Shown here piece by piece: positions 15,345 to 48,261 of a stretch of DNA of 64,000 bases (the stretch's first letter is position 1; every line of letters starts with the position of its first letter). Position numbers and translations under genes: made by a program. The notes beneath the pieces are model-generated. The model saw only the letters and a program-made list of their open reading frames with translations, did not search any database and was not told the origin of the DNA. The stretch lies in contig NC_068996.1 of assembly GCF_001194135.2 (NCBI RefSeq), forward strand, positions 36,809,653-36,873,652, read 5' to 3'. The DNA comes from Octopus bimaculoides (lineage: Eukaryota).

Positions 15345-15425
15345 GACAGCTTTTGTTACTAAGGAGATGTAATTAGTAAGGGAGGAGGTTACTTCAAAAG
15401 TATAGTGGCCAGAATAAGGAGAAAG
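15345..15425 (+). mobile_element. Displaced duplicate of an internal RTE segment
   Basis: 'agcttttgttactaaggagatgtaattagtaagggagga(g/a)gttact(t/c)caaaagtatagt' recurs at ~16320-16380. Confidence 0.7.
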
Positions 15426-15539
15426 ATTGGCATAGCAGTATCACTATAAGGTACTACAAAAGCAAAGGAGATGCCTTAGAGAGAAGCAATTATAGAGGAA
15501 TCAAATTACTGGATCAGATTATGAAAGTCAAGAAAGAGT

Positions 15540-16815: not shown

Positions 16816-17809
16816 GACTAGGATGACTGGAAATACTTGGTTCAAGAAGACCTGTCCACCTCAGCGAAACCAATTTTTAGAAGCAATGTCTATATATATA
16901 TATATATACATAGACATAAGGGCACCTTGTAGAATCTTCTTGTCATATCACGCCACTTCCACCCATTATCTCTCTCACTGTAGCTCTCCCTTGATACCAC
17001 TGTTTTCCTTGCAAATGTTGTCTCCACTCACATGTTACATTGATCATCCTCTGCCCTCTCCACTGAACCATCAAGTTATCTCCTCATGCACTACGCCTGT
17101 TTCTTTCTTCAACTGTATCACCTTTACTTACTGCTCTTCCCCACCCCAACTCTCCAACTTTTGGATTATTGGTTATCCCCTGCTCCCCACATCCACCTTT
17201 CAACCTTTCCCAATCTTTACAGTTGTTGCCTATCTCTCCTCCCCAATCTCTTGCTTCTGCACATCCCAACCTATCTACACTCCTAGTTCCTGTATCCCCA
17301 CCCATTTTTACTTACCACATACCTAGAGAGACCATCTACACACCTCATCACCACTATTTATATTTATCTCTCTGCAGCCCCTACTGATCATTCTCATCCC
17401 CTTTTCTACATGGAGTAGCTATGTAAATCTTCTAGAGAACCCCTGCTCTTCCTCTTCACCCTGCCTCATATTTTGACCTCTTGCCCCTAGCATAAAGCAG
17501 AACTCTACCTATTCTTGTGCACCAAATACACTCTGTAAAGTGGTTGGTGTTAGGACAAGCATTCAGCTGTGGAAACTATGGTAAAACAACACCGGATGCA
17601 ATGCAGTTTTAGGACCTGTCAGATCCTTTCAAACTATCTATCCAAGTTCACAATGAACAAGGATGTTCATTGTGAACTTGGATGGATGTTGATGACAATA
17701 CATACACATACATGCATGTGTATTTTTGTATATACATACACAGTCATCATCATCATCATAATTTTTTTAATGTCCTTTTTTTTCCATGCCTGCATGAATT
17801 AGATGAATC

Positions 17810-18260
17810 TTCTGCAAGTAGTATCACACCACTGGCTGTAACCTCTTGTCAGCCATTTTGTCAAGCTCAGTTTCAAGTAGTCAGCTTTCATTTCTTTCCA
17901 TATCTGCCTCTTACAAGAGTTTCTTCCACTTAGCTCACTTGACAATTCTTTATCCGACTGTTATCCCCCATGTACATCATAGCTCTCAACCAACACAGTC
18001 TCTTACACACTAATCTCAGTTTTTCTCTCAACTCAAGTGGTATTTTAGTTGTTCATTCACACTCACTAGAGAATATGCATCTCTTTTTTTTTTTTTTTTT
18101 TTCTGGCCTTCACACATTCTCCTCCACATTAAATGCTTAGGTTTCACTACCATGCAAAAAGGAAGTATTCACTACCCCTCACTCAAACAGAGAACCCCTT
18201 TGCTGCTAATAAAAGTAACAATTCTCAAAACTTTAATCCAGTTGTAACTGACTGTCCTAT
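17810..18260 (-). mobile_element. Old RTE-clade LINE C-terminal fragment
   Basis: Reverse complement resembles the 16400-16800 and 33560-33900 RTE C-terminal region (tgtcaagtgagctaagtggaagaaactcttgtaagaggcaga ~ 'RGRPRKTW'). Confidence 0.55.
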
Positions 18261-22601: not shown

Positions 22602-23458
22602 NNNNNNNNNNNNNNNNNNNNNNNNNNNNNNNNNNNNNNNNNNNNNNNNNNNNNNNNNNNNNNNNNNNNNNNNNNNNNNNNNNNNNNNNNNNNNNNNNNN
22701 NNNNNNNNNNNNNNNNNNNNNNNNNNNNNNNNNNNNNNNNNNNNNNNNNNNNNNNNNNNNNNNNNNNNNNNNNNNNNNNNNNNNNNNNNNNNNNNNNNNN
22801 NNNNNNNNNNNNNNNNNNNNNNNNNNNNNNNNNNNNNNNNNNNNNNNNNNNNNNNNNNNNNNNNNNNNNNNNNNNNNNNNNNNNNNNNNNNNNNNNNNNN
22901 NNNNNNNNNNNNNNNNNNNNNNNNNNNNNNNNNNNNNNNNNNNNNNNNNNNNNNNNNNNNNNNNNNNNNNNNNNNNNNNNNNNNNNNNNNNNNNNNNNNN
23001 NNNNNNNNNNNNNNNNNNNNNNNNNNNNNNNNNNNNNNNNNNNNNNNNNNNNNNNNNNNNNNNNNNNNNNNNNNNNNNNNNNNNNNNNNNNNNNNNNNNN
23101 NNNNNNNNNNNNNNNNNNNNNNNNNNNNNNNNNNNNNNNNNNNNNNNNNNNNNNNNNNNNNNNNNNNNNNNNNNNNNNNNNNNNNNNNNNNNNNNNNNNN
23201 NNNNNNNNNNNNNNNNNNNNNNNNNNNNNNNNNNNNNNNNNNNNNNNNNNNNNNNNNNNNNNNNNNNNNNNNNNNNNNNNNNNNNNNNNNNNNNNNNNNN
23301 NNNNNNNNNNNNNNNNNNNNNNNNNNNNNNNNNNNNNNNNNNNNNNNNNNNNNNNNNNNNNNNNNNNNNNNNNNNNNNNNNNNNNNNNNNNNNNNNNNNN
23401 NNNNNNNNNNNNNNNNNNNNNNNNNNNNNNNNNNNNNNNNNNNNNNNNNNNNNNNNNN
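22602..23458. other. Assembly gap (largest). Others: 11272-11656, 12025-12229, 36124-36297, 37170-37409, 38967-39822, 43396-43845, 53134-53253, 58822-58831, 59150-59159, 63225-63234
   Basis: N runs. Confidence 1.
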
Positions 23459-23790
23459 CCTGTTCTCTGCACTCTTCGATTAATTTTTCATATCTCTTCT
23501 CCTTTCGTTTCTCTGCATTGTCGATGTTTTCTTCCCATGGTACTGTCAGTTCTAGCAAGATTCCTATTCTCTGTTCTGTGTCCCATATGACTAAGTCTGG
23601 TCTTTTTGTTGTTTTTATAAGTGGAAAAATTGCTAGACTTCCCAAATCCGTGGCCAGCTCCCAGTATCCCTTCCATCTTTCGTCTATCTCATATATTTTA
23701 TTTGGAGGCCTGATCTTATGTCCTTTTCCCTCCTTCTGGAAGTATATTTTCCTGCGCTTTTCCACTTTGGGGTACTCTCCTCTGTTGTAT
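23459..23790 (-). mobile_element. Hero-like RLE non-LTR retrotransposon fragment (endonuclease domain), stop-free over ~110 codons, running into the gap
   Basis: Reading frame '...KIYFQKEGKGH...WELATDLGSLAIFPLIKTTKRPDLVIWDTEQRIGILLELTVPWEENIDNAEKRKEKRYEKLIEECREQ' carries the RPD-x12-ELTVPWE-x8-RK-x2-Y pattern of Hero-clade RLE endonucleases. The boundary at ~23790 is approximate. Confidence 0.8.
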
Positions 23791-25689
23791 TGATGTTCTA
23801 CAAAAAGTGACTTGATATATATTAAAAGAACTATGGAAGGCCAGATCAGCATAACATACTGACTTGCCATAGCACAGAGAAATCTTGCAACCAGGATTGA
23901 AAGCACTAGCTTGGCAGAAAACTAGAAGTCAATTACTTGTCTAAACATTTATGCATAAACCTTACACAAGCTGTCACAACCAATGCCTGCAAGACATTGT
24001 GTGTCCAACAAGATAGTAATGAATAGCTGACAGGTGGAAAGAAAGTAGTGTGGGGGAATGTACCAAACAGATTTCTTGTGATAGTAAGGATTTATTACAG
24101 AAAGGCATTGCTTCTTTCTCCCTTTCATGGATGTTGAAATCCTTGGAGTCAGTAAAAACACCCACTGCTTCAGATGTTGCCTCTGAAAGGCTCATGAAAA
24201 ACTGGCCAACAATTTTCACACATGAAAGTGAGATGATTGTTTCCAAAGATTATAAATTTTTCAAAGAGAATAATTCAAGAAGATGGTATGTCTGCGTTAC
24301 TGTATATTTTGGCACTAAATCCACTGTCTTTTCTTTTACAAAGATCCTCTGGTTATGTGTTAGGGTTTACAACAGTAAAGGATAATAATGTAAGCCTTAA
24401 TTTCGTTGTAGATGATCTAAAGATCTATACTAGATATTTATAATGCTGAAAAACAGCTGAATCTGGTAACATTTTCAAGTGATAGCAGAAGAGGATTTGA
24501 TAAAAAAAAACCCAAAAAACCCAGTTTATATCTGATACTTGAAAGCAGAAAATTTGCTTTCCAAACTCAAGACCTTTACATCATTGGTCTCCCTATATTC
24601 CCCTATTTCACTAATACTTGTACATGCTACAAAAACCTAGGTATTGATGAAAATATATCATAGAAAGGTACTGTGAACAAAGAATATTTATATCAGACTT
24701 CAAAAAAATAAAACAGTCAGGAGTCTTATAAGAAGGAAATGTCTCACAATACATTAACAATACCAGTAATGACACCAACATTTCAGATACTTGGTTTTCT
24801 ATGGAGGAAATCCATTCCACAGATACTGAAGTCTGCAAGATCCTGACTTGAAGCTTTCAAGAAACAACGATACAGTTAGATTCTATCTCAAAAGAAAAGA
24901 GGCTTAAGTTAAGTCACTTTCACTCAGACAGCATCATCTAAACAAGGCAACAAAAATTCATCAATCAAGCATTCAAAAAAATGAAGAGAATAACATCCTG
25001 CAGGTCAATAAGACTGCAGTACTCACTTTGTGATGACCTATGAGAACTCAAATATGCAAGACCAACATGTCTCAGCAAAGATCTGGAAGAAAAACATTCT
25101 ACATAACACAAAAAGGTTATGCATGGGTGCGTTTCTTACAAACTTGAAGAGAATGATAATGTTAATATTTCAGGTGACTCATAACTTACATTACATCATA
25201 CCTTGAAGATTATGCTTTTGCAATCCAACAGAAGAAAAATATCTACAGAACATCTAAAATGAACAAAGGACATAAAGAAGCCATTAAAACACCAAGATCT
25301 GACCAAAAATGTTGATAATGTCACATTTCTGTGGAGGTAATATGCGATTAGCAGTCACCCATAATGTCTTTTAAGTACTACTTTCCAATGTGGCATCATG
25401 ATATTAGCTAAATCAATATAAAATGTCGTCTGTAGGGAAAGATTGTCCTGGGAGAAATACAGATAATGCCTCTGCTACTGAATATATATCAATACAAAAA
25501 ATATCAGAACATTCCTATCAAGCACAAATATAACCAACCTGACAAAGTTGTTTGGGACAGAAAGGAAACAACCATGCAGGGCCACAGAGATTATCTGCCC
25601 AGTAGAGATGAATCTCTCTCTTTCAGGATCGGTGAGGAAGAAAAATAATTACAAACATTTACCTTGCAAAAATACATCTTAGATTTGTT

Positions 25690-26313: not shown

Positions 26314-27919
26314 CTAGAAAATTTTAGAAACTAAAGGGAAAAATATATTAATTGGTGGGAAATTTTTTTATTGAATTTTTTTTTAAAAGGATTTCGTTTT
26401 TAATGATTCAAATTAAAATATAATTCGGTGCTATATTTGAGTAAGCTCACTATAAAAATCTTGAAACATTGATATATATATACAAAGGCTGGCAGAACAG
26501 TAGCCTCATGTTTGATTACCAATGTAATACTAATGAATAACAAAGACAACCAAGAAACTATTAACAAAATAAGAATTACATTATAGACAATTGTATAGAA
26601 TCAAATAAATTTTGGCATCGGTACAGCAGAGCAATTTATAATGGCCATAACTTATTAATTTAGAGTAGTTTAATTGTTACAAAACACTAAACTTAACCAT
26701 TTTTCTTTTTTCTTTATTTTTAAGTATATTTCTCTTGAAACACATTGCCTTTGTTATTTGTTTACTTTACTCATTTAATGTCCATTGGTCATCATGGTTC
26801 AGATGAGATCTCCTTTGAGGTAGTATTTCCAGGTTGGATGTCCTTGCTATTGCCAACCTTTGTCCATTTTTCAAGTAAAGGATTTTTTAAATTTTACTGG
26901 TTTTCAAACAGCAATACAAAGAATGTAAACATTATATCACTGTTTCCTGCAAGCAGTGACAAGCAAAGCTGTGGAATGCCAACACATGCACGCACATGAC
27001 AGGCCTCCACACAGTTTCCATCTACCAAATTTCACAATCTATCAGTCAACCTCCATAAAGTGCTACTCTTAGGAACTGAACACAGAACCACAGAGTCACA
27101 AAGCATTCTTCTTAACCAGACAGCCATGATGGTCTGTGCCAACATTTATTGCAGTTTGTATATTCATGAAACCCAGCAATATTTAGCCAGGTGTGTCACC
27201 TTCCCTAACAAAACAACAATAATGCAGGCTTCAATGTTAGTCACAAGGAACAAGGTTGTTTTCAGAAGAGAAACAAACTGAATCAATAACAATTTCTCAC
27301 AGGTACTTATTTTATCATCTGCTCCATGAGGTATGAAATGTAAAATCTATCTGGGTGGGATCTAAAATCTGAATGCTGATAGAATAATAATATATATTTA
27401 AATAACATTAAATGCAACAGAGCTGGGTGGGGTTTTCTTTGATCCTTTTTTTACCAATCTCACCATTTTTTTTTCAATTACTTTTGAAAATAATGAAGAA
27501 TTTAGTAAAATAACTTGTCATCATTAAGGTAGATTTGAAATATAAATTAACATGTAATCTTTTCAAAAGGTCTTAATTTAACAGGAAATTTGTCTCTTAG
27601 AACAGGAGTGGTTTCAAGTGGTTTGAAATCAAACGAGTTAAAAGATATATGTAACTATTAGAAAATGTATAAGTGCCACTAAATACTTATACTAATTCAC
27701 ATGGCTCCAGATGTGTGAATGACTAGAGATATGGTTAGAGTTACACACGGCAGAACTGAGGCCTATAATTTAGAAAAAAAAATAATAAAGTCTTTTTTTT
27801 ATCAAAGATTAGCTGGATTAAGCCTGGGTTGGATCTGAAACAATAAAATCAATTTAGTGTGAGCAGTCTCATTTTGATTTTAAATGTTCCTTCTCTGATT
27901 GTTAACAACATCAGTTACA

Positions 27920-28250
27920 GCTCATCATAATCATTGTTTAATGTCCGCTTTCCATGCTGGCATAGGTTGGACGGGTTTGACTGAGGACAGGCTCCAATCT
28001 GATCTGGCAAGGTTTCTACAGCTCGATGTCCTTCCTAACGCCAACCACTCCAAACATAGTGGATGCTTTTTACATGCCACCAGCATGTGGGCCAGTCAGG
28101 TGGTACTGGCATCAACCACGCATGAATGGTGCTTTTTGCGTGCCACCAGCACAGGAGCCAGTCAGACAGCACTGGTATTGACCACACTGAAATGGTGCAT
28201 TCTGCATGCCACTGGCATAGGAGCAAGTCAGGCAGCACTGGCAATGACAA
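27920..28250 (-). mobile_element. RTE-3'UTR/SINE-like copy with three ~65-nt internal repeat units
   Basis: Shares 'catgctggcat...ggttggac...ctacagct(g/c)gatg(c/t)ccttcctaacgccaaccactc' with the family; the 'tggtgctttt...tgccaccagca' unit occurs three times. Confidence 0.8.
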
Positions 28251-29485
28251 TGTGAGAAAATGTCTCTTCTTCTTCTAAAGTTTGCTCACTTTTGCTCATT
28301 TTTAGAAGAAAGTTAGTTTAAGTCTTGATCATGTCAATGATATGTAACTCACCGACCAACAGGCCTTTTGTTTTTGTCAACATACACTACAACATTTGCA
28401 TCTCAAAACTCAAATTGCTATAATTTAAAATCAAGAAAATATCCTGAAATTCTTTAATGGTTATTAAATACTAAAAGACAAGAATAAAGAGTGAAAAATA
28501 GTGCAAAACTGTTTAACTTTTTTGATGCTAGCCCACCTGAAACTGCCCATGGTCCTTTGATACAAACTTCCTGGTTTGTATAAAAACATTCCATAAAAAT
28601 TTCATGTGAATTTATGTTCTGGATAGTAGCATAATACTGACAATGTTATTTTGATAAATTCTTGGTTATTTTCAAAATTAATTGTAATATAGTCAGTGTA
28701 TTTCACTACAAATATGGTAACAAAAAGATAAAAATAGTGTTTAGGGAGGAAGACAAAAAAAGACATAGAATATATATAACAACTAAGTAGCTAGTTAGAA
28801 AATCTCTATAAGAGATGATGGTAGTAACTATACTGAGAAGTAATGTTTTTTATTACCATTTCAATATGGCTGTTCTATAGGAATCAATGTTACTACTGCT
28901 TTTAACCCCAGGAAGAACCTCCTCCAGCTGGTTATTGGTGCAATCTGCACCTGATTTATATATTGCAAGCAGGGGAGTGAATCCCTACCATCTTCTAGGA
29001 GATAATGGGATCACCATACATACATATATATATATATGTGTGTGTAAATATGCAGTAACAAGACTCTTTGGTAAGTAATCAATTTGTAAGGAAATAGGCA
29101 GAAACTAAAGACATGTGCTGTTGGAAACAAGGGTTACCAAGAAAAACTAAAGGAAGAGAAAAAATAAGCAAAAGTTTGCTTCGCAACCATATTCTGCATT
29201 TGATTAGTGTTGCATCTTGGAGCTCTGAGTGGAATTTTGCAAACAGAAACCATGTGGAATGCAGTTGTGTGTATGAACATAAGTGTAAAGATATTCACTT
29301 GCTTCAGTCTTTGAACTGCAGTCATGCTTAGACAGTGCTTGAAAGGTTTTAGTCAAACAAATTACCCCAGTATTTATTCTATTGGTCTCTTATGCCAAAC
29401 CTCTAAGTTATGGGGACATAAACAAATCAGAATTGGTTGTCAACATTGATGAGGGACAAAATAAAGTCACACACATACATATGGT

Positions 29486-29535
<50 letters not shown>

Positions 29536-30188
29536 ACAGGCTTCTTTCAGTTTTGGTCGACCTAATTCACTCACAAGGCCTGAGGCTATATAAGTAGAAG
29601 ACACTTGCCCGAGGTGTCACACAATAGGACTGAACCCAGAACCATGTGGTTGAGAAGCAAACTTCCAACCACAGCCACATCTGCACACAGAAATTTTGGA
29701 GTGATGTCTTGCATGCTGGAAGACCACTGGGAGTGGAGTAACCCTCAGCCTTAGTTAAAACATGTCGCTAAGAGAAGGTCACTCTGTGGTCAGACACATC
29801 TATGAGTTGATGGCCATCACATACATATAAAACACACATGCACAGTTATATATTTATGATATATATTGCTGAAAGATGTAGACAATGATGAGAAAACTAA
29901 TGAAACAATATTTTCAAACACATCACTTAAGAGATATTTGTTCTGCCTGAATTTGCAGAGGTAATCCCTTACCCCTCTCTCTTTCATAAATATGGAGAAC
30001 TACCGATTGACCCAATCAAAATTAATAGCCAACAATGCTTTTGTGCACAAATATGCAATATACAATATACAATAAATAAATTTGCTAATAAAATTAATAA
30101 ATTTTCCAACTTGTATAACTGAACAGTTTACTATGCTGTTTTTACATGAATTTTTACAGAGTTCTCTAGCAAATAAGAGTTAAGAAAT

Positions 30189-30233
<45 letters not shown>

Positions 30234-30880
30234 TCTATTTACATTTTTCTTTTCCTTTTTTTTTTTTCCTTTGAAAAAGAAGATTCTAATGAAAATTAAG
30301 ACTGAATATTTTTACATTTACGAGATCTCTGAAGCATAAATGAATAATACCTCCATGTGTAATTTATATAATCATTCAACCATAAAAGAGAATTTCTTGT
30401 CACAATCACTGTCAAAACTGAATGAGCGTAACTCGATTGACATTCAGAAATATGGAAGTTATAGCAAAAATTTTAATTAACAGGTGAGAAACAATCCTGC
30501 ATTTAGTGTTGCTTTATTAAATGAGAGGTATAATAAGGTCAAAGTAAATGTGAGTGACTAATAGTGAATAATTTAAAAGAAAATATAGACAAAACTCATC
30601 AAACAGTTAAAAATATTATTAACCAGATCAGCAACTCTTTCAAGAAAATGACTGGTTTGGGGGAGGGGGTTATTTTAGAGAGAAGTCAGTGATACTTTTG
30701 TTGAAGTAAAACTATAGTTATTTTTAATGTTCAATAAATAAGGCCAAAATGGTCTAACAGATGAGTGTCTGTTAGGGGGTGCTGACAGAATCAGCTGAGC
30801 TAGAATTCACTGAATGTCCACAATAAAAGTTTCAACAGTTATATATATACTTGCCAAATATTCAGTTATTACCAACTTAC

Positions 30881-30912
30881 TAACCAAATTCTGAACAATT
30901 TTCTTAACTCAC
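30881..30912 (-). other. Candidate 32-nt exon beginning with a 5' splice site (recursive-splice-site / RS-exon architecture)
   Basis: Minus strand: TAATATATTTTTTTTTGTCTTTTTTTCAG|GTGAGTTAAGAAAATTGTTCAGAATTTGGTTA|GTAAGT. One open frame (phase 1 to 0: xELRKLFRIWL); the other two frames have stops. Confidence 0.5.
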
Positions 30913-31460
30913 CTGAAAAAAAGACAAAAAAAAATATATTAAAGATAAACACCAGTTTAATGAAATTTAGTGAAAAAGACAGGATACTACAAATTCAAAT
31001 ATTATGTGAAGCCTAAAATATAATTTCACAGATAATAAGAAAATTATTACTGTATATGATGGCATCTTAGATGTATCCCAATTTTAGCAGTGCACATTAC
31101 AAAAAAAATTTTTTAGTGTAACGAAACTTTATGGAAAGCCTAACTTTGCATATAAGGCCTTTTTCTGAGACATTTTTTTCCTCAAAAAAAGGAATGCATC
31201 TCATTTGCCATCAAATATAGTAACTGTCAACAGATACCAAAAGAGAAAAGCAGCACCTATTGATATCTGGAGGGCATCAAAGACAAATGAAAGAGATGAA
31301 AACCCACATTGTATGAGTTATCTTCAGAACACAGACCTTGTCTGATTGCATGCAAGACTATCTAGGGCAGGTGTCATCAAACTTTTTAGACCATCGACCC
31401 TTTCATGGAATCCTTGACCCCACTCATCAACCTCCAGGCATATACAAGAAAATAAATAAA

Positions 31461-32045
31461 TCATCATCATTTAACGTCCACTTTGCATGCTAGCATGGGT
31501 TGGACGATTTGACTGAGGACTGGTGAAACCAGATGGCTACACCAGGCTCCAATCTGATTTGGCAGAGTTTCTACAGCTGGATGCCCTTCCTAATGCCAAC
31601 CACTCAGAGAGTGTAGTGGGTGCTTTTACGTGCCACCGGCACGAAGGCCAGTCAGGCGGTACTGGCAACAGCCACGCTCAAAATGGTGTATTTTATGTGC
31701 CACCCGCACAAGAGCCAGTCCAGGGGCACTGGCAACGATCTCGCTTGAAAGTCCTTGCACATGCCGCGGGCACATGTGCCAGAAAGGCGATGATGGGCAC
31801 AGGTGCCATCTCGATTTCGATTTCACTTGCCCCAATAAGTCTTCGCAAGCTGAGTTTCGTGTCCAATGAAAGGAGACGATGTTGGCATGGGTGCCAGTCG
31901 TCGAATTTAACTCAATTTCGATTTCACTTGCCTCAACAGGTCTTCGCAAGTGGAGTTTAGTGTCCAATGAAGGAAGGTACGCCTAAGTGGACTGGCTGAG
32001 ACCTTAGAATTAGGTCTCACTTGGCTTGCCGGGTCTTCTCACACA
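31461..32045 (-). mobile_element. RTE 3'UTR-derived copy
   Basis: Near-identical to 33005-33580, including 'ctacagctggatgcccttcctaa(c/t)gccaaccactc' and a (CAT)n tail. Confidence 0.85.
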
Positions 32046-32626
32046 CAACATTTGGCATAGTTTCTACAGCTGGATGCCATTCCTATTGCATCTTTCTCCT
32101 TGAATAGTCCAACCAACTTCCAGGGGTTAATATCGACCACTTTGTAGACACCTGATCTAAGGTTTAGGTGATGGTTTGAAATACAGAAAAGGTTTAAGTA
32201 TATTACACAGTCCATTCAGCAGGTATCTGCACAGTTTCTATCTACCCAAGTTTATTCAAAATATATAAACGCTTATCACCTACTCAGGATAATATATAAA
32301 AATTTTACTGAGTCTGAAGGAATGAAATTTCACTTCAACATGATTTGAATTCACAATGCAGAAAATCACATTTTCATAGAATATGGAATGAAAGAAGAGA
32401 AGCACCAAACAGAGATATTATTCTTTCAGCAAGCCAAAGATATTTAATAATTATTGAGCCTAAGATATTTAATAAAAAAAACCTGAATGTCACACAATAG
32501 TACTTTCGCTCCTCTTTACATATAGGCATAGCAAATGGGTTAGCATCATCAAGAGCATCTGGCTATAAAATACCTCAAAAAGTCCTGCCCAACCCCTGCC
32601 AGCATGGAAAAGAGACTGTAAAGACA

Positions 32627-32981
32627 TTGATCATCATCATCATCATCATCATCGTTTAACGTCTGCTTTCCATGCTAGCAAGGGTTGGACGATTTGACTG
32701 AGGACTGGTGAACCAGGTGGTTACACCAGGCTCCAATCTGATTTGGCAGAGTTTCTACAGCTGGATGCCCTTCCTAACACCAACCACTCTGAGAGTGTAG
32801 TGGGTGCTTTTACGTGTCACCGGCACGAAGGCCAGTCAGGCTTTACTGGCAACGCTCAAAATGGTGTCTTTTACGTGCCACCTGCACGGGAGCCAGTCCA
32901 GCGGCACTGGCAACGATCTCGCTCGAATGTCCTTACACGTGCCACGGGCACAAGTGCCAGGGCACAGGTGCCATCACGATT
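32627..32981 (-). mobile_element. Truncated copy of the same RTE 3'UTR, abutting the previous element
   Basis: Near-identical to 33000-33350; (CAT)n tail at ~32627-32653. Confidence 0.85.
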
Positions 32982-33897
32982 GATCATCATCATCATCATC
33001 ATCATCATCATCGTTTAACATCCGCTTTCCATGCTAGCATGGGTTGGATGATTTGACTGAGGACTGGTGAAACCAGATGGCAACACCAGGCTCCAATCTG
33101 ATTTGGCAGAGTTTCTACAGCTGGATGCCCTTCCTAACGCCAACCACTCAGTGAGTGTAGTGGGTGCTTTTACGTGTCACCCGCACGAAGGCCAGTCAGG
33201 CGGTACTGGCAACAGCCACGCTCAAAATGGTGTATTTTATGTGCCACCCGCACAAGAGCCAGTCCAGGGGCACTGGCAACGATCTCGTTTGAAAATCCTT
33301 ACACATGTCACGGGCACAAGTGCCAGAAAGGCGACGCTGGGCACAGGTGCTATCCCGATTTCGCTTTCGCTTGCCCCAATAAGTCTTCGCAAGCTGAGTT
33401 TCGTGTCCAATGAAGGAAACGACGTTGGCACGGGTGCCAGTCGTCGAATTTATTTCGATTTCATTTGCCTCAACAAGTCTTCGCAAGCGGAGTTTAGTGT
33501 CCAATGTAGAAAAGGTGCGCATAAGTGGGCTCCTGGCAGGGGCCTTGGATTTAGGTCTCACTTGACTTGCCGGGTCTTCTCATGCACAGCACATTTCCAA
33601 ATGTCTTGGTCAGTAGTCATCGCCTCGGTGAGGCCCAATGTTCGAAGGTCTTGCCTCACCAACTCAGCCCAGGTCTTCCTGGGCCTACCTCTTCTACGGG
33701 TTCCCACAACTGTTAGGGTGTGGCACTTTTTCACGCAGCTATCCTCATCCATTCTCACCACATGTCCATACCAGCGCAATCGTCTCTCTTGCACACCACA
33801 ACTGATGCTTCTTATGTTCAGCTTTTCTCTCAAGATACTTACACTCTGTCGGGTATGCACACTTACATTACACATCCAACGGAGCATACTGGTTTCA
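32982..33897 (-). mobile_element. Young 5'-truncated RTE-clade LINE with long 3'UTR and (ATG)n tail
   Basis: Stop-free 'ETSMLRWMCNVSVHTRQSVSILREKLNIRSISCGVQERRLRWYGHVVRMDEDSCVKKCHTLTVVGTRRRGRPRKTW...EKTRQVK*' (33558-33897); (CAT)n on + at ~32982-33012; CpGs retained. Confidence 0.9.
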
Positions 33898-34330
33898 TTT
33901 GTGGCTGTGCGGTAAGACACTTGCTTCTCAACCACATGGTACTGTGTTCAGTTCCACTGTGTGGCACCTTGGCTGAGTGTCTTCGACTGTAGGTTTGGGC
34001 CGACCAAAGCCTTGTGAGTGGATTTAGTAGACAGAAACTGAAAGAAGCCTGTTGTGTGTGTGTATATATATATATATGTATATATACATATATGTGTGTG
34101 TGTGCATACAATATGTTTGTGTCTGTGTTTGTCCCCCTCCCCAATCATCACTTGACAACTGCTGTTGGAGTTTTTATGTCCCTGTAACTTAGCAGTTTGG
34201 TAAAAGGGACTGATAGAATAAGTACAAGGTTTACAAAGAATAAGTCCAGGGGTCGATTCCTTCAGCTAAAAGGTGGTGCTCCAGCATGACCACAGTCAAA
34301 ATGACTGAAACAAGTAAAAGTGTAAAAGAG
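33898..34330 (+). mobile_element. Bipartite SINE copy
   Basis: Same head, microsatellite and tail layout as 55791-56200. Confidence 0.85.
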
Positions 34331-36070
34331 TATTAGAAATAACATTTTACATGATCATACAACCTGTTAGAAATAGCAGCTAAATCTCCCTAACATCACA
34401 CCCTATTGCTTTAAAAAAACAAAATGAAAGATTCATTGAATAATGCAATATTAAATGAAACTATGACTAAATAAAAAAAATAAAAAGATAGGAACACCTT
34501 TGATAGATCTGTTTGATCAGTGTTGAACAAAACAACAAGAGGCTTTCTGCTTTAAATCTTACACCTTTGTATCAAGTTTCTTTTTAGTTCAACTATGCAG
34601 TCTACATACAGAGAGGATAGTTTCTTTTATCTTCTACCTTTAACTTGTTGCAGTCATTAGACTATAGCCATGCTGAAGTACTGCCTTGAAGGATTTAGTC
34701 CAATGAACATATCCTAGTAGTTGAATGATGGTTAGGAACTAATACACACATGTATGAATGTGTCCTTGTGTGGATATATAAGTTTAAGTCACAATATATG
34801 AATTCAAGTAATCTAGTAGTACTCATGAAAAAAGCTCCTTAATGTATTATTCTACAAAACATATAGAATATATAGTACAATACAAGAGAAAACAATAAGG
34901 AGTGTATAAAGTTATAAATGACAGAGAAATACTTGGATGAAATTTTATTTAACAATAAGAAAATTCTAATATCATGACAAATTGTTTCATAACTTAAAAA
35001 CATGTAAATAATTTATATTATTTTATTCAATAATAAATAAATTACTTACATGCCAATTATGATTCTATATAAATATATACATGACAGGTTTCCATCTACC
35101 AAATTTTCTCACAAAGCATTGGTCCTCTCAGAGCTATGACAAAAGACATTTACCCAAGGTACCACATGGTAGGACTGAACTTGAAATCATGTGGTTGCAA
35201 TGCAAGCTTCTTAACCATACAGTTATAACCATTCTAAATATAAACACTATACCTCTGCTATCCCCTTCTCAAAAAAAAAAAAAAAAAAAGAGTGGCAATA
35301 TTAAATTAGAGGTACCATGAGTATGCCAGAGGTAGTTTTGTAATCATGTGATCTTGTGTTATATCTCACTTGGGCACATGTCTTTTATTGTAGTCTCAAA
35401 GTGAACAATGCTCTTTTAGCAGAACTGGTAGTCAAAAACTATATAGAAGACTCTTGTGCAGGTATGTGCTTAAGAGTGAGTGTTTATAAATCATCATCAT
35501 CATTTAGAGTCTGCTTTCCATGCTGGCATGGGTTAGACAGTTTCACTGGAACTGATAAGCCAGAGAGCTGCACAAAGTCCCACTCTGATTTAACATGGTT
35601 TCTACAGCTGGATGCCCTTCCTAATGTCAACAACTCCAAGAGGGTAATGAGTGCTTTTTATGTGCCAGCAGTATGTAAAAAGCACCCATTCCATGTCTTT
35701 ACATAAAAGCAGAGCTAAAAATGTTGATGCCAAGTTGACATTCCCTATCAACACTATTATTCTCTAGCTTTGCACTTTCAAAGGCAAGTAAAATAAAAAC
35801 AAAAACATCCTTCAACTGAATACAGATTAGGCTTAGAGACAAGAAAGGCATCCAACTGTAAAATAATGCCTCAATAATGTCTCCTCCAACCCATGCTAGC
35901 ATGGTAAAACAGATGTAAAATGAATGAATGAACAACCTAACAAACAACCTTTTTTAACAGATTCCAACACTTTCATAAAATATGCCCATGTGTTTTTTAA
36001 CCTTTGGTGGACATCATCAACTGATGTTTTATTAGAAAACAGTGGACATCATGAAAGGAAAGTGAAAACT

Positions 36071-37169
36071 TTATGACATTTTTCAAGAGATTGTAAATTT
36101 TATTGTGTGAGGGGTTAATAATTNNNNNNNNNNNNNNNNNNNNNNNNNNNNNNNNNNNNNNNNNNNNNNNNNNNNNNNNNNNNNNNNNNNNNNNNNNNNN
36201 NNNNNNNNNNNNNNNNNNNNNNNNNNNNNNNNNNNNNNNNNNNNNNNNNNNNNNNNNNNNNNNNNNNNNNNNNNNNNNNNNNNNNNNNNNNNNNNNNTTA
36301 TGACATTTTTCAAGAGATTGTAAATTTTATTGTGTGAGGGGTTAATAATTATCATAGCTTTTCTACTTATTCAAAGTGAAAATAAGTATTAGAAAAAAAG
36401 AAGGATTGGTTTTTGTTTTTTGCCTATTTGGCAAACACATTCATGCAACCCTTTCACACAGTTATGGGTTAAATCATAAAATAATGACTGAGAATAATGA
36501 CAAGGTCATCATAACTAGGATACAAATCAAATGAGTGCTTGGTCAGCAACATATATATAGTCCTTAGCAGAATTGCTATTACAGCTACAGCTTTTGATGA
36601 CAATAGTAATAAAATGAAAGTAATTTGTATTTGAGAGAGTTTTATGGACTGTAGTAGAGGAGATAAAGGACAATTAGAATATGCAAAAAGAAAATGAGAT
36701 AAGGGAAATAACTCCAGTGGGCTAACAGCATGATTTTAGATAATTAAGAGGTGATGTACTAAATGACATGCAACAATTACTCAATGAATTAGACACACAC
36801 ACATACACACACACAGAGTCACCAAAGTACAAATCTCTGATCATACTGTCGATTCATAATTCCAGTTACACAGAATATAATAATCAAAAAAATTATTGAC
36901 GTATTTAGTTGGAAATTTTGTAAACATGATACCAGTTTCAAGTCCAACAGTGACCAATAAGGACATCCAACCTTTCTGTCATAAATCACAAATTATAAAC
37001 CATTTAGAACATCAAAGCAGTTATGTCATGCTAAGTTGTATATATGACATTTTTCAAGAGATTGTAAATTTTATTGTGTGAGGGGTTAATAATTATCATA
37101 GCTTTTCTACTTATTCAAAGTGAAAATAAGTATTAGAAAAAAAGAAGGATTGGTTTTTGTTTTTTGCCT
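36071..37169. repeat. Direct repeats with ~744-bp period around two gaps
   Basis: 36301-36425 is identical to 37045-37169; the first ~50 nt also occur at 36074-36123. Confidence 0.8.
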
Positions 37170-37409
37170 NNNNNNNNNNNNNNNNNNNNNNNNNNNNNNN
37201 NNNNNNNNNNNNNNNNNNNNNNNNNNNNNNNNNNNNNNNNNNNNNNNNNNNNNNNNNNNNNNNNNNNNNNNNNNNNNNNNNNNNNNNNNNNNNNNNNNNN
37301 NNNNNNNNNNNNNNNNNNNNNNNNNNNNNNNNNNNNNNNNNNNNNNNNNNNNNNNNNNNNNNNNNNNNNNNNNNNNNNNNNNNNNNNNNNNNNNNNNNNN
37401 NNNNNNNNN

Positions 37410-38225
37410 TATATACCCCACATTCCCTTCCCAGTTTTCAGAGTTGGCACTGTCAATGTAGGCACACTGAAAGGTAGGTCTAGTGAGATTGTAGAGATGC
37501 TTGAAAGGAGACGGGTCGATGTAACATGGGCTGTGACTGCTGAAGACATGCGTAGGCTCGAAAGAAATGAAGCTAGCATGATCCACTGGATGTGTAATAT
37601 CAGTGTGCACACACAACAGAGTATAAGCACCCTGAGAGAAATGTTAGACATAAGAAGCATCAGATGTGGAGTGCAAGAGAGATGTTTTCATTGGTATGAT
37701 CATGTACTGCGGATAGACGAGAAGACCCAGCAAATAAAGTGAGTCCACAGCTGTAACCTACACCAGCATCGCATAACCAGCCCACTCAAAAGTACCTTGG
37801 ATCATAGGGCGACATGCCGTGCTTGAGGAGACTTATTGAGTCAAGTACATCAACATCAATATCAAAATCAAATCAAATCAAATTATAATCAAATGGAAAT
37901 TGTAGTTGTGACCCTCGTGCTGGTAGCATGTAAAAAGCACCATCTGAATGTGGCCAATGCCAGTGTCGCCTTGACTGGCATCCGTGCCGGTGGTACATAA
38001 AAAGCACCATCCGATTGTGGTTGATGCTAGCACCTCTGGCCCCTGTGCCAGTGGCACTTAAAAAAGCACCTGCTACACTCTTGGAGTGGTTGGCATTAGG
38101 AAGGGCATCCAGCTGTAGAAACACTGCCAGATCAGATTGGGGCCTGGTGCAGCCTCCTGGCTTCCCAGACCCGTCAAACCGTCCAACCCATGCCAGCATG
38201 GAAAACAGACGTTAAATGATGATGA
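37410..38225 (+). mobile_element. Internally deleted RTE derivative: endonuclease N-terminus fused to post-RT C-terminus, then 3'UTR and (ATG)n tail
   Basis: One frame reads 'FRVGTVNVGTLKGRSSEIVEMLERRRVDV|TWAVTAEDMRRLERNEASMIHWMCNISV...GVQERCFHWYDHVLRIDE|KTQQIK*'; junction at 37523/37524. Confidence 0.8.
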
Positions 38226-38493
38226 GAATGATATATATATATATATCCATGTCCATGTATGCATACATCATACAAGGCTGTACGTATATACAATACACCA
38301 TACTATATTCATCATACTGGCCACATATCATACCAGGTTGTACACACACACACACACACCATACAATATGCATAGCATCTAAGACTGATCAGTATACACT
38401 CTAATTTACACTCATCTTATATCAGACTGAACAACATATACACATCATACAAGGCTGCAGGATGTGCATACACATAAACATTATACAAGCATG

Positions 38494-38543
<50 letters not shown>

Positions 38544-39822
38544 GTATATATAACATTGTGAAATTCACACATCACAAGTCTGTAAAAAAGGCATATCATG
38601 TCCAAACACCTTGTTCATGATGGAAATGCACATGCATACACGCATACGCACACACACACACACACATGTGCACACATGCACACACACCACATCACATCAC
38701 ATACACCACCTAATAATAAACCTCTATATGGTTTGCTCAACCAGCTAAAACTTACAACCAAATCTCTCTCAAACCACAGCAAACTACATGCTTCTGGGTC
38801 CAGTCCCACTGTGTGGCACCTTGGGCAAATGTCTTTTATTATAGCCTTGTGCCAACCAAAGCCGTGTGAGTGGATTTGGTACACAGAAACTGAAAGAAGA
38901 CCATCTTAAAAAGGACACAAAGTAATGTGGTCCTGGATATAACCTGAAAATAAGATGAGATGGTCTNNNNNNNNNNNNNNNNNNNNNNNNNNNNNNNNNN
39001 NNNNNNNNNNNNNNNNNNNNNNNNNNNNNNNNNNNNNNNNNNNNNNNNNNNNNNNNNNNNNNNNNNNNNNNNNNNNNNNNNNNNNNNNNNNNNNNNNNNN
39101 NNNNNNNNNNNNNNNNNNNNNNNNNNNNNNNNNNNNNNNNNNNNNNNNNNNNNNNNNNNNNNNNNNNNNNNNNNNNNNNNNNNNNNNNNNNNNNNNNNNN
39201 NNNNNNNNNNNNNNNNNNNNNNNNNNNNNNNNNNNNNNNNNNNNNNNNNNNNNNNNNNNNNNNNNNNNNNNNNNNNNNNNNNNNNNNNNNNNNNNNNNNN
39301 NNNNNNNNNNNNNNNNNNNNNNNNNNNNNNNNNNNNNNNNNNNNNNNNNNNNNNNNNNNNNNNNNNNNNNNNNNNNNNNNNNNNNNNNNNNNNNNNNNNN
39401 NNNNNNNNNNNNNNNNNNNNNNNNNNNNNNNNNNNNNNNNNNNNNNNNNNNNNNNNNNNNNNNNNNNNNNNNNNNNNNNNNNNNNNNNNNNNNNNNNNNN
39501 NNNNNNNNNNNNNNNNNNNNNNNNNNNNNNNNNNNNNNNNNNNNNNNNNNNNNNNNNNNNNNNNNNNNNNNNNNNNNNNNNNNNNNNNNNNNNNNNNNNN
39601 NNNNNNNNNNNNNNNNNNNNNNNNNNNNNNNNNNNNNNNNNNNNNNNNNNNNNNNNNNNNNNNNNNNNNNNNNNNNNNNNNNNNNNNNNNNNNNNNNNNN
39701 NNNNNNNNNNNNNNNNNNNNNNNNNNNNNNNNNNNNNNNNNNNNNNNNNNNNNNNNNNNNNNNNNNNNNNNNNNNNNNNNNNNNNNNNNNNNNNNNNNNN
39801 NNNNNNNNNNNNNNNNNNNNNN

Positions 39823-42800: not shown

Positions 42801-44666
42801 ATAAACACGTTGCCATGATCAAGTAGGCCTACGATTAAAAGTATTGTATATCAAAGACTGAAGATGATTCCTTTGTTAACTTACCACTAAACATTACTGA
42901 GTAAATACTATACATATATATTCACACACACACACGTACATATAGAATTATATATTCATTTGTTTGTTTTTACATGCTAGCATAGGTTAGACAAAATAGA
43001 TTGAACTCTTCTTCCATGGCTGGATGCCCATCCTGTTGCTAACCCTTACCTGCTTTTCCCAAGTAAAGGATATCTTATTTCACCCATCTTCAAAGATAAG
43101 GCACTAATCAATGGATGACCCAAAAACAATTGAAAAGAAAGCAACATCACTGCCCACAGCTGACCAAATGTCAGAGATGAGCCTTATATAAAAACACACA
43201 CACACACATATGAAGAGTTTCTTTCAGTTTCTATCATGAAATTCACCCACAAGGTTTTGGTTGGCCTAGGGCTATAGAAGAAGGAACTTCCCTCAACCAC
43301 GTGGTGGGGGAGTGAAGTCCTTACCCAAATACTCTGTAATCACACACTCAGCTGTTGCTGGTGGATAGGTTTCCATGTTGTGTGTGTGTGTGTGTNNNNN
43401 NNNNNNNNNNNNNNNNNNNNNNNNNNNNNNNNNNNNNNNNNNNNNNNNNNNNNNNNNNNNNNNNNNNNNNNNNNNNNNNNNNNNNNNNNNNNNNNNNNNN
43501 NNNNNNNNNNNNNNNNNNNNNNNNNNNNNNNNNNNNNNNNNNNNNNNNNNNNNNNNNNNNNNNNNNNNNNNNNNNNNNNNNNNNNNNNNNNNNNNNNNNN
43601 NNNNNNNNNNNNNNNNNNNNNNNNNNNNNNNNNNNNNNNNNNNNNNNNNNNNNNNNNNNNNNNNNNNNNNNNNNNNNNNNNNNNNNNNNNNNNNNNNNNN
43701 NNNNNNNNNNNNNNNNNNNNNNNNNNNNNNNNNNNNNNNNNNNNNNNNNNNNNNNNNNNNNNNNNNNNNNNNNNNNNNNNNNNNNNNNNNNNNNNNNNNN
43801 NNNNNNNNNNNNNNNNNNNNNNNNNNNNNNNNNNNNNNNNNNNNNATATATATATATATATATATATATATAAACATCATTGTCGTCATCATTGGCATGG
43901 GTTGGATGATTTTACAAGATCCAATGAGTCCAAGGACTGCACTGTGCTCCAGGGTCTGTTTAGACATAGTTTCTATGCCAACCATTTTGTAGCATGCACT
44001 GGGTGTTTTTTTTTTTTTTACATGCCACCAACACTAGTGAGGGTGCCATGCAACTTACAAGACCACAACATCCCAGGTGGGGGAGAGCAGTAGTTATGTG
44101 AGGAGATGAAGGTATAGAATATGAGTAGAGGAAAAGAGGGAGGGGGAAAGAAGGAAGGAGAAAGGAAGGTAGGGGGAAAGCAGGTTCTAGTCAAGAAGCT
44201 ACATGGTTACTCACTTTTATGAGAAAAAGTAAAGGTTACAAGTTCAAGTAGCTACTCAAGGTATGAATATAAATGATGACCTCTTATTTTCAACAGCATA
44301 AACATACAAAAAGAGTTCAGGTAAGCCAACTGAATAATGAGGTTGATAAGTAAATAAATTTTCTTATGAAGGTGTTACTCCCCTTCCCGATTACAACTAT
44401 TCGTTTCACAAAAGAGTTTATTTTTACAAGAAAATAATGTAGTAAAGGAGAAAAATAGCATAAAAGTGTGGTGTGTAGCTAACACAGAAATAAGTAATAC
44501 ATTTCTTATTTCTACAAATAAGGACATAAAACATGCTAAATACTTTTGCCTTGCTTTAAGCTATCAACTCTTTGAAATTGTAAGGATGCCATCCTGAAAT
44601 ATGGTGAGTCATGGACATTTTTATAATCCAGGTCTGATCACAGCTGGTTTGTTCTGTGTGTGTGTA

Positions 44667-47388: not shown

Positions 47389-48261
47389 CAACAAAAGCAA
47401 CCACCACAATTCAACATGCTTTGTCTGCAAAATTAACAGCATTCTAAGTTGCCAAATTCCTAAACCTATCTTTCAAACCAATTTGGAATTCAGCATTGTA
47501 GTTACAAGTTAAAGCTTCTAAGTTCAAATCCTGCTAGTAATAAAGGCTATCAGTTAAGTAGTAGGGTCTGATTATATCAACTATGTCTTTGAAATCTGAG
47601 GTCATGTACCAAAATTTAGAACTCGTATAATTATCATTGCTCAAATCCACAGTTTCAAATCTAGCCAAAGTCAACTTTGTTTTTCATCCTTTCAGAGTTG
47701 ATAAAACAACGTAGCAGTTAAATATTGATCAACTAAACCCTAACTCCATATTTCAGGTATACACACATATATTATATAGTAGCTTAAAATGGCAATTTTT
47801 AAGCTAGCTCCTGTGGAGGGCTCTTCATTGGGCCTTGGGCCCAACAATGACACTTCATGCATTGAGTACATATTAAACTTGACCAATATTTTTCAAGAAA
47901 TGAACAATTTTCATTAAAACAATGATATAATATATCAACTTGGAACTTATTGCAAAGCTGCATGATTAACAACATTTTTCTGTCTTCTCATTCAGGGGTC
48001 AGTACCATATTTTTTCTATCTAACTTTTCTCACTCTCTCTCTCTCTCTCTCTCTCCCCTTTTCTATTGATTGTTTTCAACCATCACCATCACCAGTACCA
48101 CCACCATCGCCACCACCATCAATACCTTTGACTTTGTGTCTTCCCCTCCACCACCATCGTCACTGTCTTTCACATCGCTTACTATCAGTCATCCCTGACT
48201 GCCTCGGCTACCACCACCACCACCATCATCATCACTGTCACCTCCACCTCTGTCACAACTA

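What the first reader, a model, noticed from the sequence alone, without database searches (positions are those of the whole stretch)
30875..30945. Consensus recursive-splice-site-like junction with a 32-nt RS-exon on the minus strand
Seen: a very strong polypyrimidine acceptor (TTTTTTTTTGTCTTTTTTTCAG) is followed with zero spacing by a consensus donor GTGAGT, and a second consensus donor (GTAAGT) lies 32 nt downstream. It was the best AG|GT junction I found on either strand and lies in non-repeat sequence. Established: this acceptor / regenerated donor / short exon / downstream donor layout defines recursive splice sites and RS-exons in long introns of Drosophila and vertebrates. Inference: a ratchet point in a long intron of a minus-strand gene. 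I am not aware of recursive splicing being characterised in cephalopods. Alternatively it is an ordinary coding micro-exon (xELRKLFRIWL, phase 1 to 0) that happens to start with GT, in which case skipping would frameshift, giving a potential regulatory switch.
Basis: partly seen in the sequence, partly recalled or inferred. Interest (0 to 1): 0.7.

Follow-up and report, generated by a model that had tools for sequence, protein, structure and literature searches.

The report
Candidate recursive splice site, octopus DNA
A near-perfect "acceptor fused to donor" splice motif with a second donor 32 bases on really is there and is far stronger than chance gives in this window, so it is a credible but unproven candidate for stepwise (recursive) removal of a long intron in an octopus gene.

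Summary
On the minus strand, TTTTTTTTTGTCTTTTTTTCAG (AG at 30914-30913) abuts GTGAGT (30912-30907). A second consensus donor, GTAAGT, lies at 30880-30875, bounding a 32-nt segment.

With simple splice-site matrices the junction scores 23.4 bits. The next best of 7,108 AG sites scores 13.2. About 0.006 sites this strong are expected per window, and none of 150 simulated windows reached it. A second GTRAGT within 15-100 nt has P about 0.05.

Every sequence-level hallmark of a Drosophila-type ratchet point with a cryptic RS-exon is met:
- very strong pyrimidine tract, with TT at -5/-6;
- a 74-nt AG-free zone upstream;
- a short, frame-breaking segment with stop codons in two frames;
- a downstream donor weak on its exon side.

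The deciding criteria could not be tested: host gene, strand of transcription, intron length, cross-species conservation and RNA evidence. I found no exon in the window, and strand skews only weakly favour minus-strand transcription. A retrotransposon ORF's best named match is Octopus vulgaris.

My estimates are: functional recursive site about 0.42, chance motif about 0.40, expressed cassette or poison exon about 0.10. If real, it is a new member of a known kind in a lineage where recursive splicing is undescribed.

The parts
30939..30971 (-). Candidate branch-point region: YTNAY matches with the A at -27 (30939), -34 (30946), -49 (30961) and -59 (30971), and CTAAA with the A at -55 (30967)
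   Evidence: Motif scan. These are sequence matches only; none is shown to be used.
30915..30986 (-). AG-exclusion zone: no AG dinucleotide for 74 nt upstream of the acceptor AG
   Evidence: distance to the previous AG is 74 nt; sequence.
30916..30934 (-). Polypyrimidine tract TTTTTTTTTGTCTTTTTTT, with TT at -5/-6 relative to the splice junction
   Evidence: The acceptor score of 14.1 bits ranks 3rd of 7,108 AG sites. TT at -5/-6 is found in 99.5% of fly ratchet points.
30913..30915 (-). Acceptor CAG (AG = 30914-30913); the junction lies between 30913 and 30912
30907..30912 (-). Donor GTGAGT directly abutting the acceptor (the donor that would be regenerated after the first splice)
   Evidence: The intronic donor score of 9.3 bits ranks 2nd of 7,108.
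30881..30912 (-). 32-nt candidate cryptic RS-exon GTGAGTTAAGAAAATTGTTCAGAATTTGGTTA. Stops in two frames (VS*, *V..); the third frame reads ELRKLFRIWL; length is not a multiple of 3
30875..30880 (-). Downstream donor GTAAGT (context TTA|GTAAGT), which would define the short exon
   Evidence: Its full donor score is 4.1 bits because of the poor exon side. The chance of a GTRAGT at 15-100 nt is 0.049.

Best explanation
The site is a recursive splice site (ratchet point) in a long intron of a gene transcribed on the minus strand of this octopus scaffold.

Proposed mechanism, all steps inferred:
1. The very strong acceptor (branch point about 27-59 nt upstream, 19-nt pyrimidine tract, CAG) and the downstream donor GTAAGT at 30880 together define a 32-nt cryptic exon by exon definition.
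2. The upstream exon is spliced to position 30912. This removes the first part of the intron as a lariat and regenerates a donor (exon end + GTGAGT).
3. That regenerated donor has a better exon side than TTA|GTAAGT, so it outcompetes the downstream donor.
4. The 32-nt segment is then removed together with the rest of the intron and leaves no trace in the mRNA.
5. If the regenerated donor fails, inclusion of the 32 nt would shift the frame or introduce a stop.

Shown here: only the sequence anatomy and its statistical rarity.
For: - The motif is present exactly as described.
- The combined acceptor+donor score is 23.4 bits, 10 bits above the runner-up. The expected number per 64-kb window (both strands) is 0.006, none of 150 Markov-4 windows reach it, and reversed decoys score 15 or less.
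- A second consensus donor at +32 has P=0.049 by chance, so the joint expectation is about 3e-4 per window.
- Features named in the literature as typical of fly ratchet points are all met: a tandem SA|SD with an unusually strong 3' splice site; TT at -5/-6 (196 of 197 ratchet points); a short cryptic RS-exon (~50 nt, variable) flanked by a downstream donor; RS-exon content out of frame or carrying stops; and the ratchet-point donor usually stronger than the RS-exon donor.
- There is a 74-nt AG-free zone with several branch-point-like motifs.
- Shepard et al. 2009 found such motifs 4- to 22-fold enriched on the sense strand of >50-kb introns in all five invertebrates tested (sea urchin, fly, mosquito, bee, beetle) but 1.5-fold or less in vertebrates. 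In an invertebrate, then, a strong motif in a sense-strand long intron is usually not chance.
- The minus strand is T-rich over A by 5% in unique sequence (12 of 16 bins) and has twice as many T-runs. T>A is the general signature of the coding strand of introns.
- No exon-like ORF lies anywhere in the 64 kb, as expected if the window sits inside a very long intron.
Against: - There is no evidence that the minus strand is transcribed or that the window lies in a gene at all. The absence of exons fits an intergenic desert equally well.
- The G>C skew on the minus strand is the vertebrate direction. Invertebrate introns studied so far show C>G on the coding strand, so the two skews may disagree. 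The T-richness could also come from retroposon tails.
- A 32-nt exon is at the short end for exon definition (fly RS-exons are ~50 nt).
- In a genome of roughly 2.7 Gb (my recollection for Octopus bimaculoides), the null expectations scale to about 260 equally strong junctions by chance, and about 13 with a consensus second donor. One such site is therefore not proof.
- It is unknown whether cephalopods, whose genomes are repeat-rich like those of vertebrates, show the invertebrate-type enrichment.
- Conservation and RNA data are absent.
- The splice matrices I used are approximate, human-like and written from memory.
Confidence: 0.42

Rival explanations
1. Chance juxtaposition. A T-rich low-complexity tract, of which this AT-rich window has many on the minus strand, happens to be followed by CAGGTGAGT in non-functional intronic or intergenic DNA. 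The GTAAGT 32 nt on is a second coincidence.
For: - AGGTRAGT occurs at the frequency composition predicts: 3 copies, and my own back-of-envelope estimate from base composition is about 3.5. So there is no general excess.
- T-runs of 6 or more number 249 on the minus strand, and 0.3% of all 20-nt windows are at least 19/20 pyrimidine.
- Scaled to a genome of about 2.7 Gb, the null predicts hundreds of junctions this strong and about a dozen with a second consensus donor.
- No gene, exon, conservation or expression evidence supports function.
- The composite was defined after looking.
Against: - The per-window expectation is only 0.006 (3e-4 with the second donor), and none of 150 simulations reach the score.
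- All the ancillary hallmarks of ratchet points (TT at -5/-6, long AG-free zone, out-of-frame short exon, weak exon side of the second donor) happen to be right as well.
- In every invertebrate tested, most such motifs on the sense strand of long introns exceed the chance level.
Confidence: 0.4
2. An expressed exon. The 32-nt segment would be a real cassette exon of a minus-strand gene (coding, UTR or NMD-triggering 'poison' exon) that merely begins with GT, or an expressed RS-exon whose inclusion is regulated.
For: - Strong acceptor and consensus donor flank a segment with one open frame, ELRKLFRIWL.
- Annotated exons starting with a donor-like GT exist by the hundreds in mammals, and some fly RS-exons (Ubx mI/mII) are expressed.
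Against: - 32 nt is not a multiple of three, and two frames carry stops within the first 9 nt.
- The donor that would have to be used (TTA|GTAAGT, 4.1 bits) is much weaker than the regenerated one would typically be (about 11 bits). That predicts skipping under the donor-competition model.
- No TGC element lies near the acceptor. That is the hallmark of SRRM4-type neuronal micro-exons, from my own knowledge.
- A 10-residue peptide cannot be tested by homology.
Confidence: 0.1
3. Retroposon-tail origin. The pyrimidine tract would be the antisense copy of a decayed poly(A) tail of a plus-strand retroposed element whose body lies at coordinates up to about 30913 (the geometry of Alu exonisation). 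The site would then be a by-product of a repeat, functional or not.
For: - On the plus strand the tract reads GAAAAAAAGACAAAAAAAAATATAT.
- A-runs of 10 or more are 18 on the plus strand against 5 on the minus strand, consistent with many plus-oriented tails.
- The window is full of SINE and LINE debris.
Against: - No other copy of 30401-31400 exists in the window.
- No target-site duplication flanks it.
- The nearest AATAAA is about 90 nt from the A-run.
- None of the roughly 16 SINE copies in the window carries this sequence.
Confidence: 0.05

Closest known systems
Drosophila intronic ratchet points with cryptic RS-exons (Hatton 1998; Burnette 2005; Duff 2015; Joseph, Kondo & Lai 2018; Joseph et al. 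2021, PMC8605326)
   Same: - Zero-spacing acceptor|donor around AG|GT.
- Exceptionally strong pyrimidine tract with TT at -5/-6.
- Short downstream segment closed by a second donor.
- Segment out of frame with stops.
- Second donor predicted to lose to the regenerated one.
   Different: - The donor is GTGAGT rather than the fly-preferred GTAAGT.
- The putative RS-exon is 32 nt, against a typical ~50 nt.
- The organism is a cephalopod.
- Host intron, conservation and usage, which define the fly set, are unknown here.
Vertebrate recursive splice sites and RS-exons in long neuronal genes (Sibley et al. 2015; Blazquez et al. 2018, PMC6224609)
   Same: RS-exon definition followed by competition between the reconstituted and the downstream 5' splice site. 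Inclusion would introduce a premature stop or a frameshift, acting as a binary switch.
   Different: Vertebrate sites were found from RNA data in genes longer than 150 kb. Their motifs show little sense-strand enrichment, so the motif alone predicts poorly there. Whether octopus behaves like vertebrates or like other invertebrates in this respect is unknown.
Computationally predicted RP-sites in large introns of invertebrates (Shepard, McCreary & Fedorov 2009, PMC2773006)
   Same: It is identified purely from a combined acceptor/donor consensus score, as here. Those motifs are 4- to 22-fold enriched on the sense strand in sea urchin, fly, mosquito, bee and beetle.
   Different: No mollusc was analysed, and the sense strand is not known for this window.
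Neuronal micro-exons and poison cassette exons
   Same: A very short exon with strong flanking splice sites.
   Different: - The length is not a multiple of three.
- There are stops in two frames.
- There is no UGC element near the acceptor.
- The exon begins with a consensus donor.

Membership tests
Recursive splice site / ratchet point with RS-exon | [quoted passage not shown] | tested here: met
   YYY...CAG|GTGAGT at 23.4 bits, the top of 7,108 AG sites.
Recursive splice site / ratchet point with RS-exon | 3' splice-site half stronger than ordinary acceptors; TT at -5/-6 | tested here: met
   The tract is 19/20 pyrimidines and the acceptor score ranks 3rd of 7,108. Positions -5/-6 are TT.
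Recursive splice site / ratchet point with RS-exon | Short cryptic exon closed by a downstream 5' splice site (exon definition) | tested here: met
   GTAAGT lies 32 nt downstream; P by chance is 0.049. [quoted passage not shown]
Recursive splice site / ratchet point with RS-exon | RS-exon content generally out of frame or stop-containing | tested here: met
   32 nt; stops in two of three frames.
Recursive splice site / ratchet point with RS-exon | Regenerated donor at least as strong as the RS-exon donor (needed for zero-nucleotide outcome) | tested here: inconclusive
   The intronic halves score 9.3 against 8.7 bits. The RS-exon donor has a poor exon side (TTA, total 4.1 bits). The regenerated donor would score 4.6-13.5 bits depending on the unknown upstream exon end, about 11 for a typical one. 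The matrices are approximate.
Recursive splice site / ratchet point with RS-exon | Located in a long intron, in the sense orientation of an expressed gene | tested here: inconclusive
   No exon was found in 64 kb on either strand (the homology searches with concatenated ORFs are weak negatives). T>A on the minus strand favours minus-strand transcription, but the GC skew is ambiguous. No annotated gene could be retrieved.
Recursive splice site / ratchet point with RS-exon | Strong evolutionary conservation of the SA|SD core, weaker in the RS-exon body | not testable with these tools
   No cephalopod genome collection is searchable. An exact-match scan of metagenome contigs found nothing.
Recursive splice site / ratchet point with RS-exon | RNA evidence: junction reads into the site, saw-tooth intron coverage, recursive lariats | not testable with these tools
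   No RNA-seq access.
Coding / neuronal micro-exon | Frame-preserving length and a conserved open frame | tested here: not met
   32 nt is not a multiple of 3 and only one frame is open. Conservation was not testable.
Repeat-derived pseudo-exon (antisense retroposon tail) | The site lies inside a multi-copy element with a poly(A)-derived tract and target-site duplications | tested here: not met
   No further copies in the window and no target-site duplication. Genome-wide copy number was not testable.

The most novel reading that the evidence does not exclude
Cephalopods remove their very long introns by Drosophila-style zero-nucleotide recursive splicing through cryptic RS-exons, and this is a first concrete site. 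That would place ratchet-point splicing in Lophotrochozoa as well as in insects, sea urchin (by motif enrichment) and vertebrates, so it would be ancestral to bilaterians. It would also give a frame-breaking 32-nt switch in a long octopus gene.
Probability: 0.4. Interest if true: 0.55.

Novelty: new member of a known kind. Interest (0 to 1): 0.4.

Why it matters
Octopus genomes are large, with long introns in neuronal and developmental genes, yet how those introns are spliced accurately has not been studied. I found no paper on recursive splicing in octopus or molluscs.

A validated site would extend recursive splicing to a third major animal branch. It would support the idea, so far based on motif counts in five invertebrates, that ratchet points are an ancestral solution for long introns that vertebrates largely abandoned. 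It would also mark a position where one mutation, or a regulated donor choice, would insert a frame-breaking 32-nt exon.

The claim can be tested directly with public octopus RNA-seq and genome alignments, so the cost of resolving it is low.

Tried and rejected
1. Exon hunting by homology. I concatenated all non-repeat ORFs of at least 33 aa with GC at or above 0.38 into pseudo-proteins and searched them: minus strand 4,341 aa, plus strand 4,402 aa. There were no hits. The plus query also contained a fragment I take to be a mariner-type transposase C-terminus, and that found nothing either, so I treat these negatives as weak.
2. Pfam on ten ORFs, most of them suspected TE fragments: nothing significant. 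These fragments are too decayed for Pfam.
3. Ranking ORFs by protein-like amino-acid composition. Only SINE/LINE frames, microsatellite translations and a purine-rich stretch next to a LINE fragment (16.9-17.3 kb) surfaced. None is a credible exon.
5. Rfam and tRNA scans of the window: nothing.
6. Look-ups of four window ORFs, hoping to pull the annotated source contig: none on record.
7. An exact 41-mer scan of metagenome contigs: no match.
8. The retroposon-tail idea: no target-site duplication, no in-window copies, and SINE orientation is unbiased at 9 plus to 7 minus.
9. Poly(A)-signal asymmetry (AATAAA 92 plus, 82 minus): uninformative.
10. The perfect TACTAAC on the plus strand (30877-30883) is just the reverse complement of GTTAGTA at the second donor. 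It has no usable acceptor downstream, so I dismissed it as coincidence.

Full report
**Observation**

Reading the minus strand gives ...aatatatttttttttgtctttttttcag|gtgagttaagaaaattgttcagaatttggtta|gtaagttgg. In window coordinates:
- pyrimidine tract 30934-30916;
- CAG 30915-30913;
- first donor GTGAGT 30912-30907;
- enclosed segment 30912-30881 (32 nt);
- second donor GTAAGT 30880-30875.

Every string and coordinate in the finding is correct. The window holds only three AGGTRAGT octamers on both strands. The other two (plus 45487, minus 57933) have 12/20 and 9/20 pyrimidines upstream, against 19/20 here.

**Is it more than chance?**

The window is AT-rich (GC about 34%) and rich in homopolymer tracts, so I used empirical nulls.
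- 0.31% of all 20-nt windows are at least 19/20 pyrimidine. Four such tracts end in AG, and one of them, this site, is followed by GT.
- I scored every AG in the window (7,108 sites, both strands) with a 20-nt acceptor matrix plus a 6-nt intronic donor matrix. The matrices are approximate and human-like, written from memory, and expressed as log-odds against window composition.
- This site scores 23.4 bits: acceptor 14.1 (rank 3), donor 9.3 (rank 2). The runner-up scores 13.2.
- If acceptor and donor halves are paired independently, 0.0062 sites at or above 23.4 are expected per window. The same null predicts 2.9 sites at or above 13.2, and 2 are observed, so it is calibrated.
- None of 150 order-4 Markov windows reached 23.4 (mean window maximum 16.4, highest 23.3). 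Reversed-sequence decoys, which keep all tracts, top out at 15.0 and 14.3.
- A GTRAGT 15-100 nt downstream of a random position occurs with probability 0.049, so the full composite is expected about 3e-4 times per window.

Scaled to a genome of about 2.7 Gb (my recollection for Octopus bimaculoides, not a tool result), that is about 260 equally strong junctions and about 13 with a consensus second donor arising by chance somewhere in the genome.

**Local anatomy**

- Upstream of the acceptor there is no AG for 74 nt.
- YTNAY matches place candidate branch adenosines at -27, -34, -49 and -59, and a CTAAA at -55.
- Positions -5/-6 are TT.
- The 32-nt segment has stops in two frames (VS*, *V...). 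In the third it reads ELRKLFRIWL.
- Read-through past the second donor stops within a few codons in that open frame, so no longer coding exon can begin at this acceptor.
- The second donor has a perfect intron side but a poor exon side (TTA|GTAAGT, 4.1 bits in total). The regenerated donor would score about 11 bits with a typical exon end, with a range of 4.6-13.5.

**Surroundings**

- The 1 kb around the site has no other copy in the window apart from matches of 28 nt or less to the A/T tract.
- The nearest in-window repeats are at 29347-29686 and 31452-32089. The nearest tandem repeats are (TA)n at 29486-29531 and 30192-30233.
- No target-site duplication suggests a retroposon ending in the A-rich tract on the plus strand.
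- The window as a whole is repeat debris. A SINE-like family has about 16 copies in both orientations. There are LINE reverse-transcriptase fragments, microsatellites and eleven assembly gaps.
- The RT-tail ORF at 33561-33947 (minus) has as its best named homologue a hypothetical protein of Octopus vulgaris (74% identity), followed by arthropod and other invertebrate hits.

**Gene context: the crux, unresolved**

- I found no credible exon on either strand. Composition-based ranking of all ORFs surfaced only repeats and low complexity.
- Homology searches with concatenated ORFs returned nothing. These are weak negatives, because a presumed transposase fragment in the plus-strand query also went unmatched.
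- Pfam, Rfam and tRNA scans were empty.
- Four look-ups of window ORFs found no annotated contig.

Strand composition gives a hint.
- In unique sequence the plus strand has A>T by 5.1% and C>G by 6.0%. A>T holds in 12 of 16 4-kb bins.
- T-runs of 6 or more number 249 on the minus strand against 124 on the plus strand.
- T over A is the general signature of the coding strand of introns. The G/C direction, however, differs between vertebrates (G) and the invertebrates studied (C).
- So the TA skew favours minus-strand transcription while the GC skew is ambiguous. Retroposon tails could contribute to both.

**Comparison with what is known**

The literature defines fly ratchet points as follows:
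- tandem acceptor|donor motifs in long introns;
- acceptor halves stronger than ordinary ones;
- TT at -5/-6 in 196 of 197 cases;
- a short (~50 nt), poorly conserved, generally out-of-frame cryptic RS-exon closed by a downstream donor;
- usually a stronger regenerated donor;
- an ultraconserved SA|SD core;
- constitutive use, seen as saw-tooth coverage, junction reads and lariats.

All the sequence-level criteria are met here. The contextual, evolutionary and RNA criteria are untestable with these tools.

Two results set the value of motif-only evidence. First, 91 of Burnette's 160 predictions, made from conservation between two Drosophila species, were later confirmed by RNA-seq. Second, Shepard et al. 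found such motifs 4- to 22-fold enriched on the sense strand over the antisense strand of >50-kb introns in sea urchin, fly, mosquito, bee and beetle. In eight vertebrates the enrichment was 1.5-fold or less. No mollusc was included.

Searches for recursive splicing together with cephalopod, octopus or mollusc terms found no study of the topic.

**Weighing**

The question is what fraction of junctions this strong, genome-wide, are functional. The chance supply is about 260, or about 13 with a second consensus donor.
- If octopus resembles the other invertebrates, with hundreds or more functional sites in its abundant long introns, most such sites are real.
- If it resembles vertebrates, few are.

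With no knowledge of host gene or strand, I put the functional recursive site at about 0.42, a chance motif at about 0.40, and an expressed cassette or poison exon at about 0.10. The remainder goes to a repeat-derived origin. These numbers rest on my own rough priors and are not tool outputs.

**Verdict**

The recursive-splice reading is the single best explanation but is not demonstrated. If true, it is a new member of a known kind in an unstudied lineage. Mapping the window to an annotated assembly, inspecting public total RNA-seq, aligning congeneric genomes and making a sense/antisense motif count in long octopus introns would settle it.

Noticed in passing
window 31452-34333, also 27908-28248, 35485-35676, 37914-38246, 48246-48545 and others: An abundant SINE-like repeat whose translation reads ...LQSDLAEFLQLDALPNANHS.... 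It has about 16 copies in the window, 9 on the plus strand and 7 on the minus strand. A cluster of three tandem or nested copies begins only about 540 nt upstream (in the minus-strand sense) of the candidate site.
   Followed up: partly
window 15380-16820 (+), 33558-33935 (-), 37410-37742 (+), 16498-16821 (+): Decayed LINE reverse-transcriptase fragments and RT C-terminal tails (motif ...ERRLRWYGHV...). For the 33561-33947 ORF the best named homologue is an Octopus vulgaris hypothetical protein (74% identity), then arthropod proteins. Pfam does not recognise any of them.
   Followed up: partly
window 59763-59978 (+): A 72-aa ORF (PPNSPGYNTLDYYAWVTVERE...ELKARIMVAFTNLNKEMVQKSCRRFRSCLEVVVEANGNFIE) that looks to me like the C-terminus of a Tc1/mariner-type transposase. 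This rests on my recollection only: there was no Pfam hit, and no database hit when it was embedded in the concatenated query.
   Followed up: partly
window 23459-23906 (-), abutting the gap 22602-23458: An ORF containing ...KRPDLVIWDTEQRIGILLELTVPWEENIDNAEKRKEKRYEKLIEECREQ, which runs into an assembly gap. It resembles a domain seen in some retroelements (from memory). It was not tested.
   Followed up: no
whole window: Consistent strand asymmetry in unique sequence. The plus strand has A>T by 5.1% and C>G by 6.0%. A-runs of 10 or more number 18 against 5 T-runs, and runs of 6 or more number 249 against 124. This could reflect minus-strand transcription, retroposon tails or replication direction.
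   Followed up: partly
window 16811-18140 (+) and 56667-57300 (+): Two C/T-rich, strongly GC-skewed stretches (GC skew down to -0.33), giving long Ser/Pro/Leu/Thr-rich ORFs of 171 and 178 aa on the plus strand and purine-rich ORFs on the minus strand. The first lies directly after the LINE fragment and may be its 3' region. The nature of the second is unknown.
   Followed up: no
window 11272-11655, 12025-12229, 22602-23458, 36124-36297, 37170-37409, 38967-39822, 43396-43845, 53134-53253, 58822-58831, 59150-59159, 63225-63234: Eleven runs of N (3,316 bases in all). This is a gapped scaffold assembly, and an exon or repeat hidden in a gap cannot be excluded.
   Followed up: no
window 30877-30883 (+): A perfect TACTAAC branch-point consensus on the plus strand. 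It is simply the reverse complement of GTTAGTA at the second donor and has no usable acceptor downstream. I judged it coincidental.
   Followed up: yes
minus strand 6037, 18622, 50240: The next-best AG|GT junctions (12.3-13.2 bits: ccccag|GTCAGT, ttacag|GTGGGA, cctcag|GTCAGT) all lie on the minus strand. Their number matches the chance expectation.
   Followed up: yes
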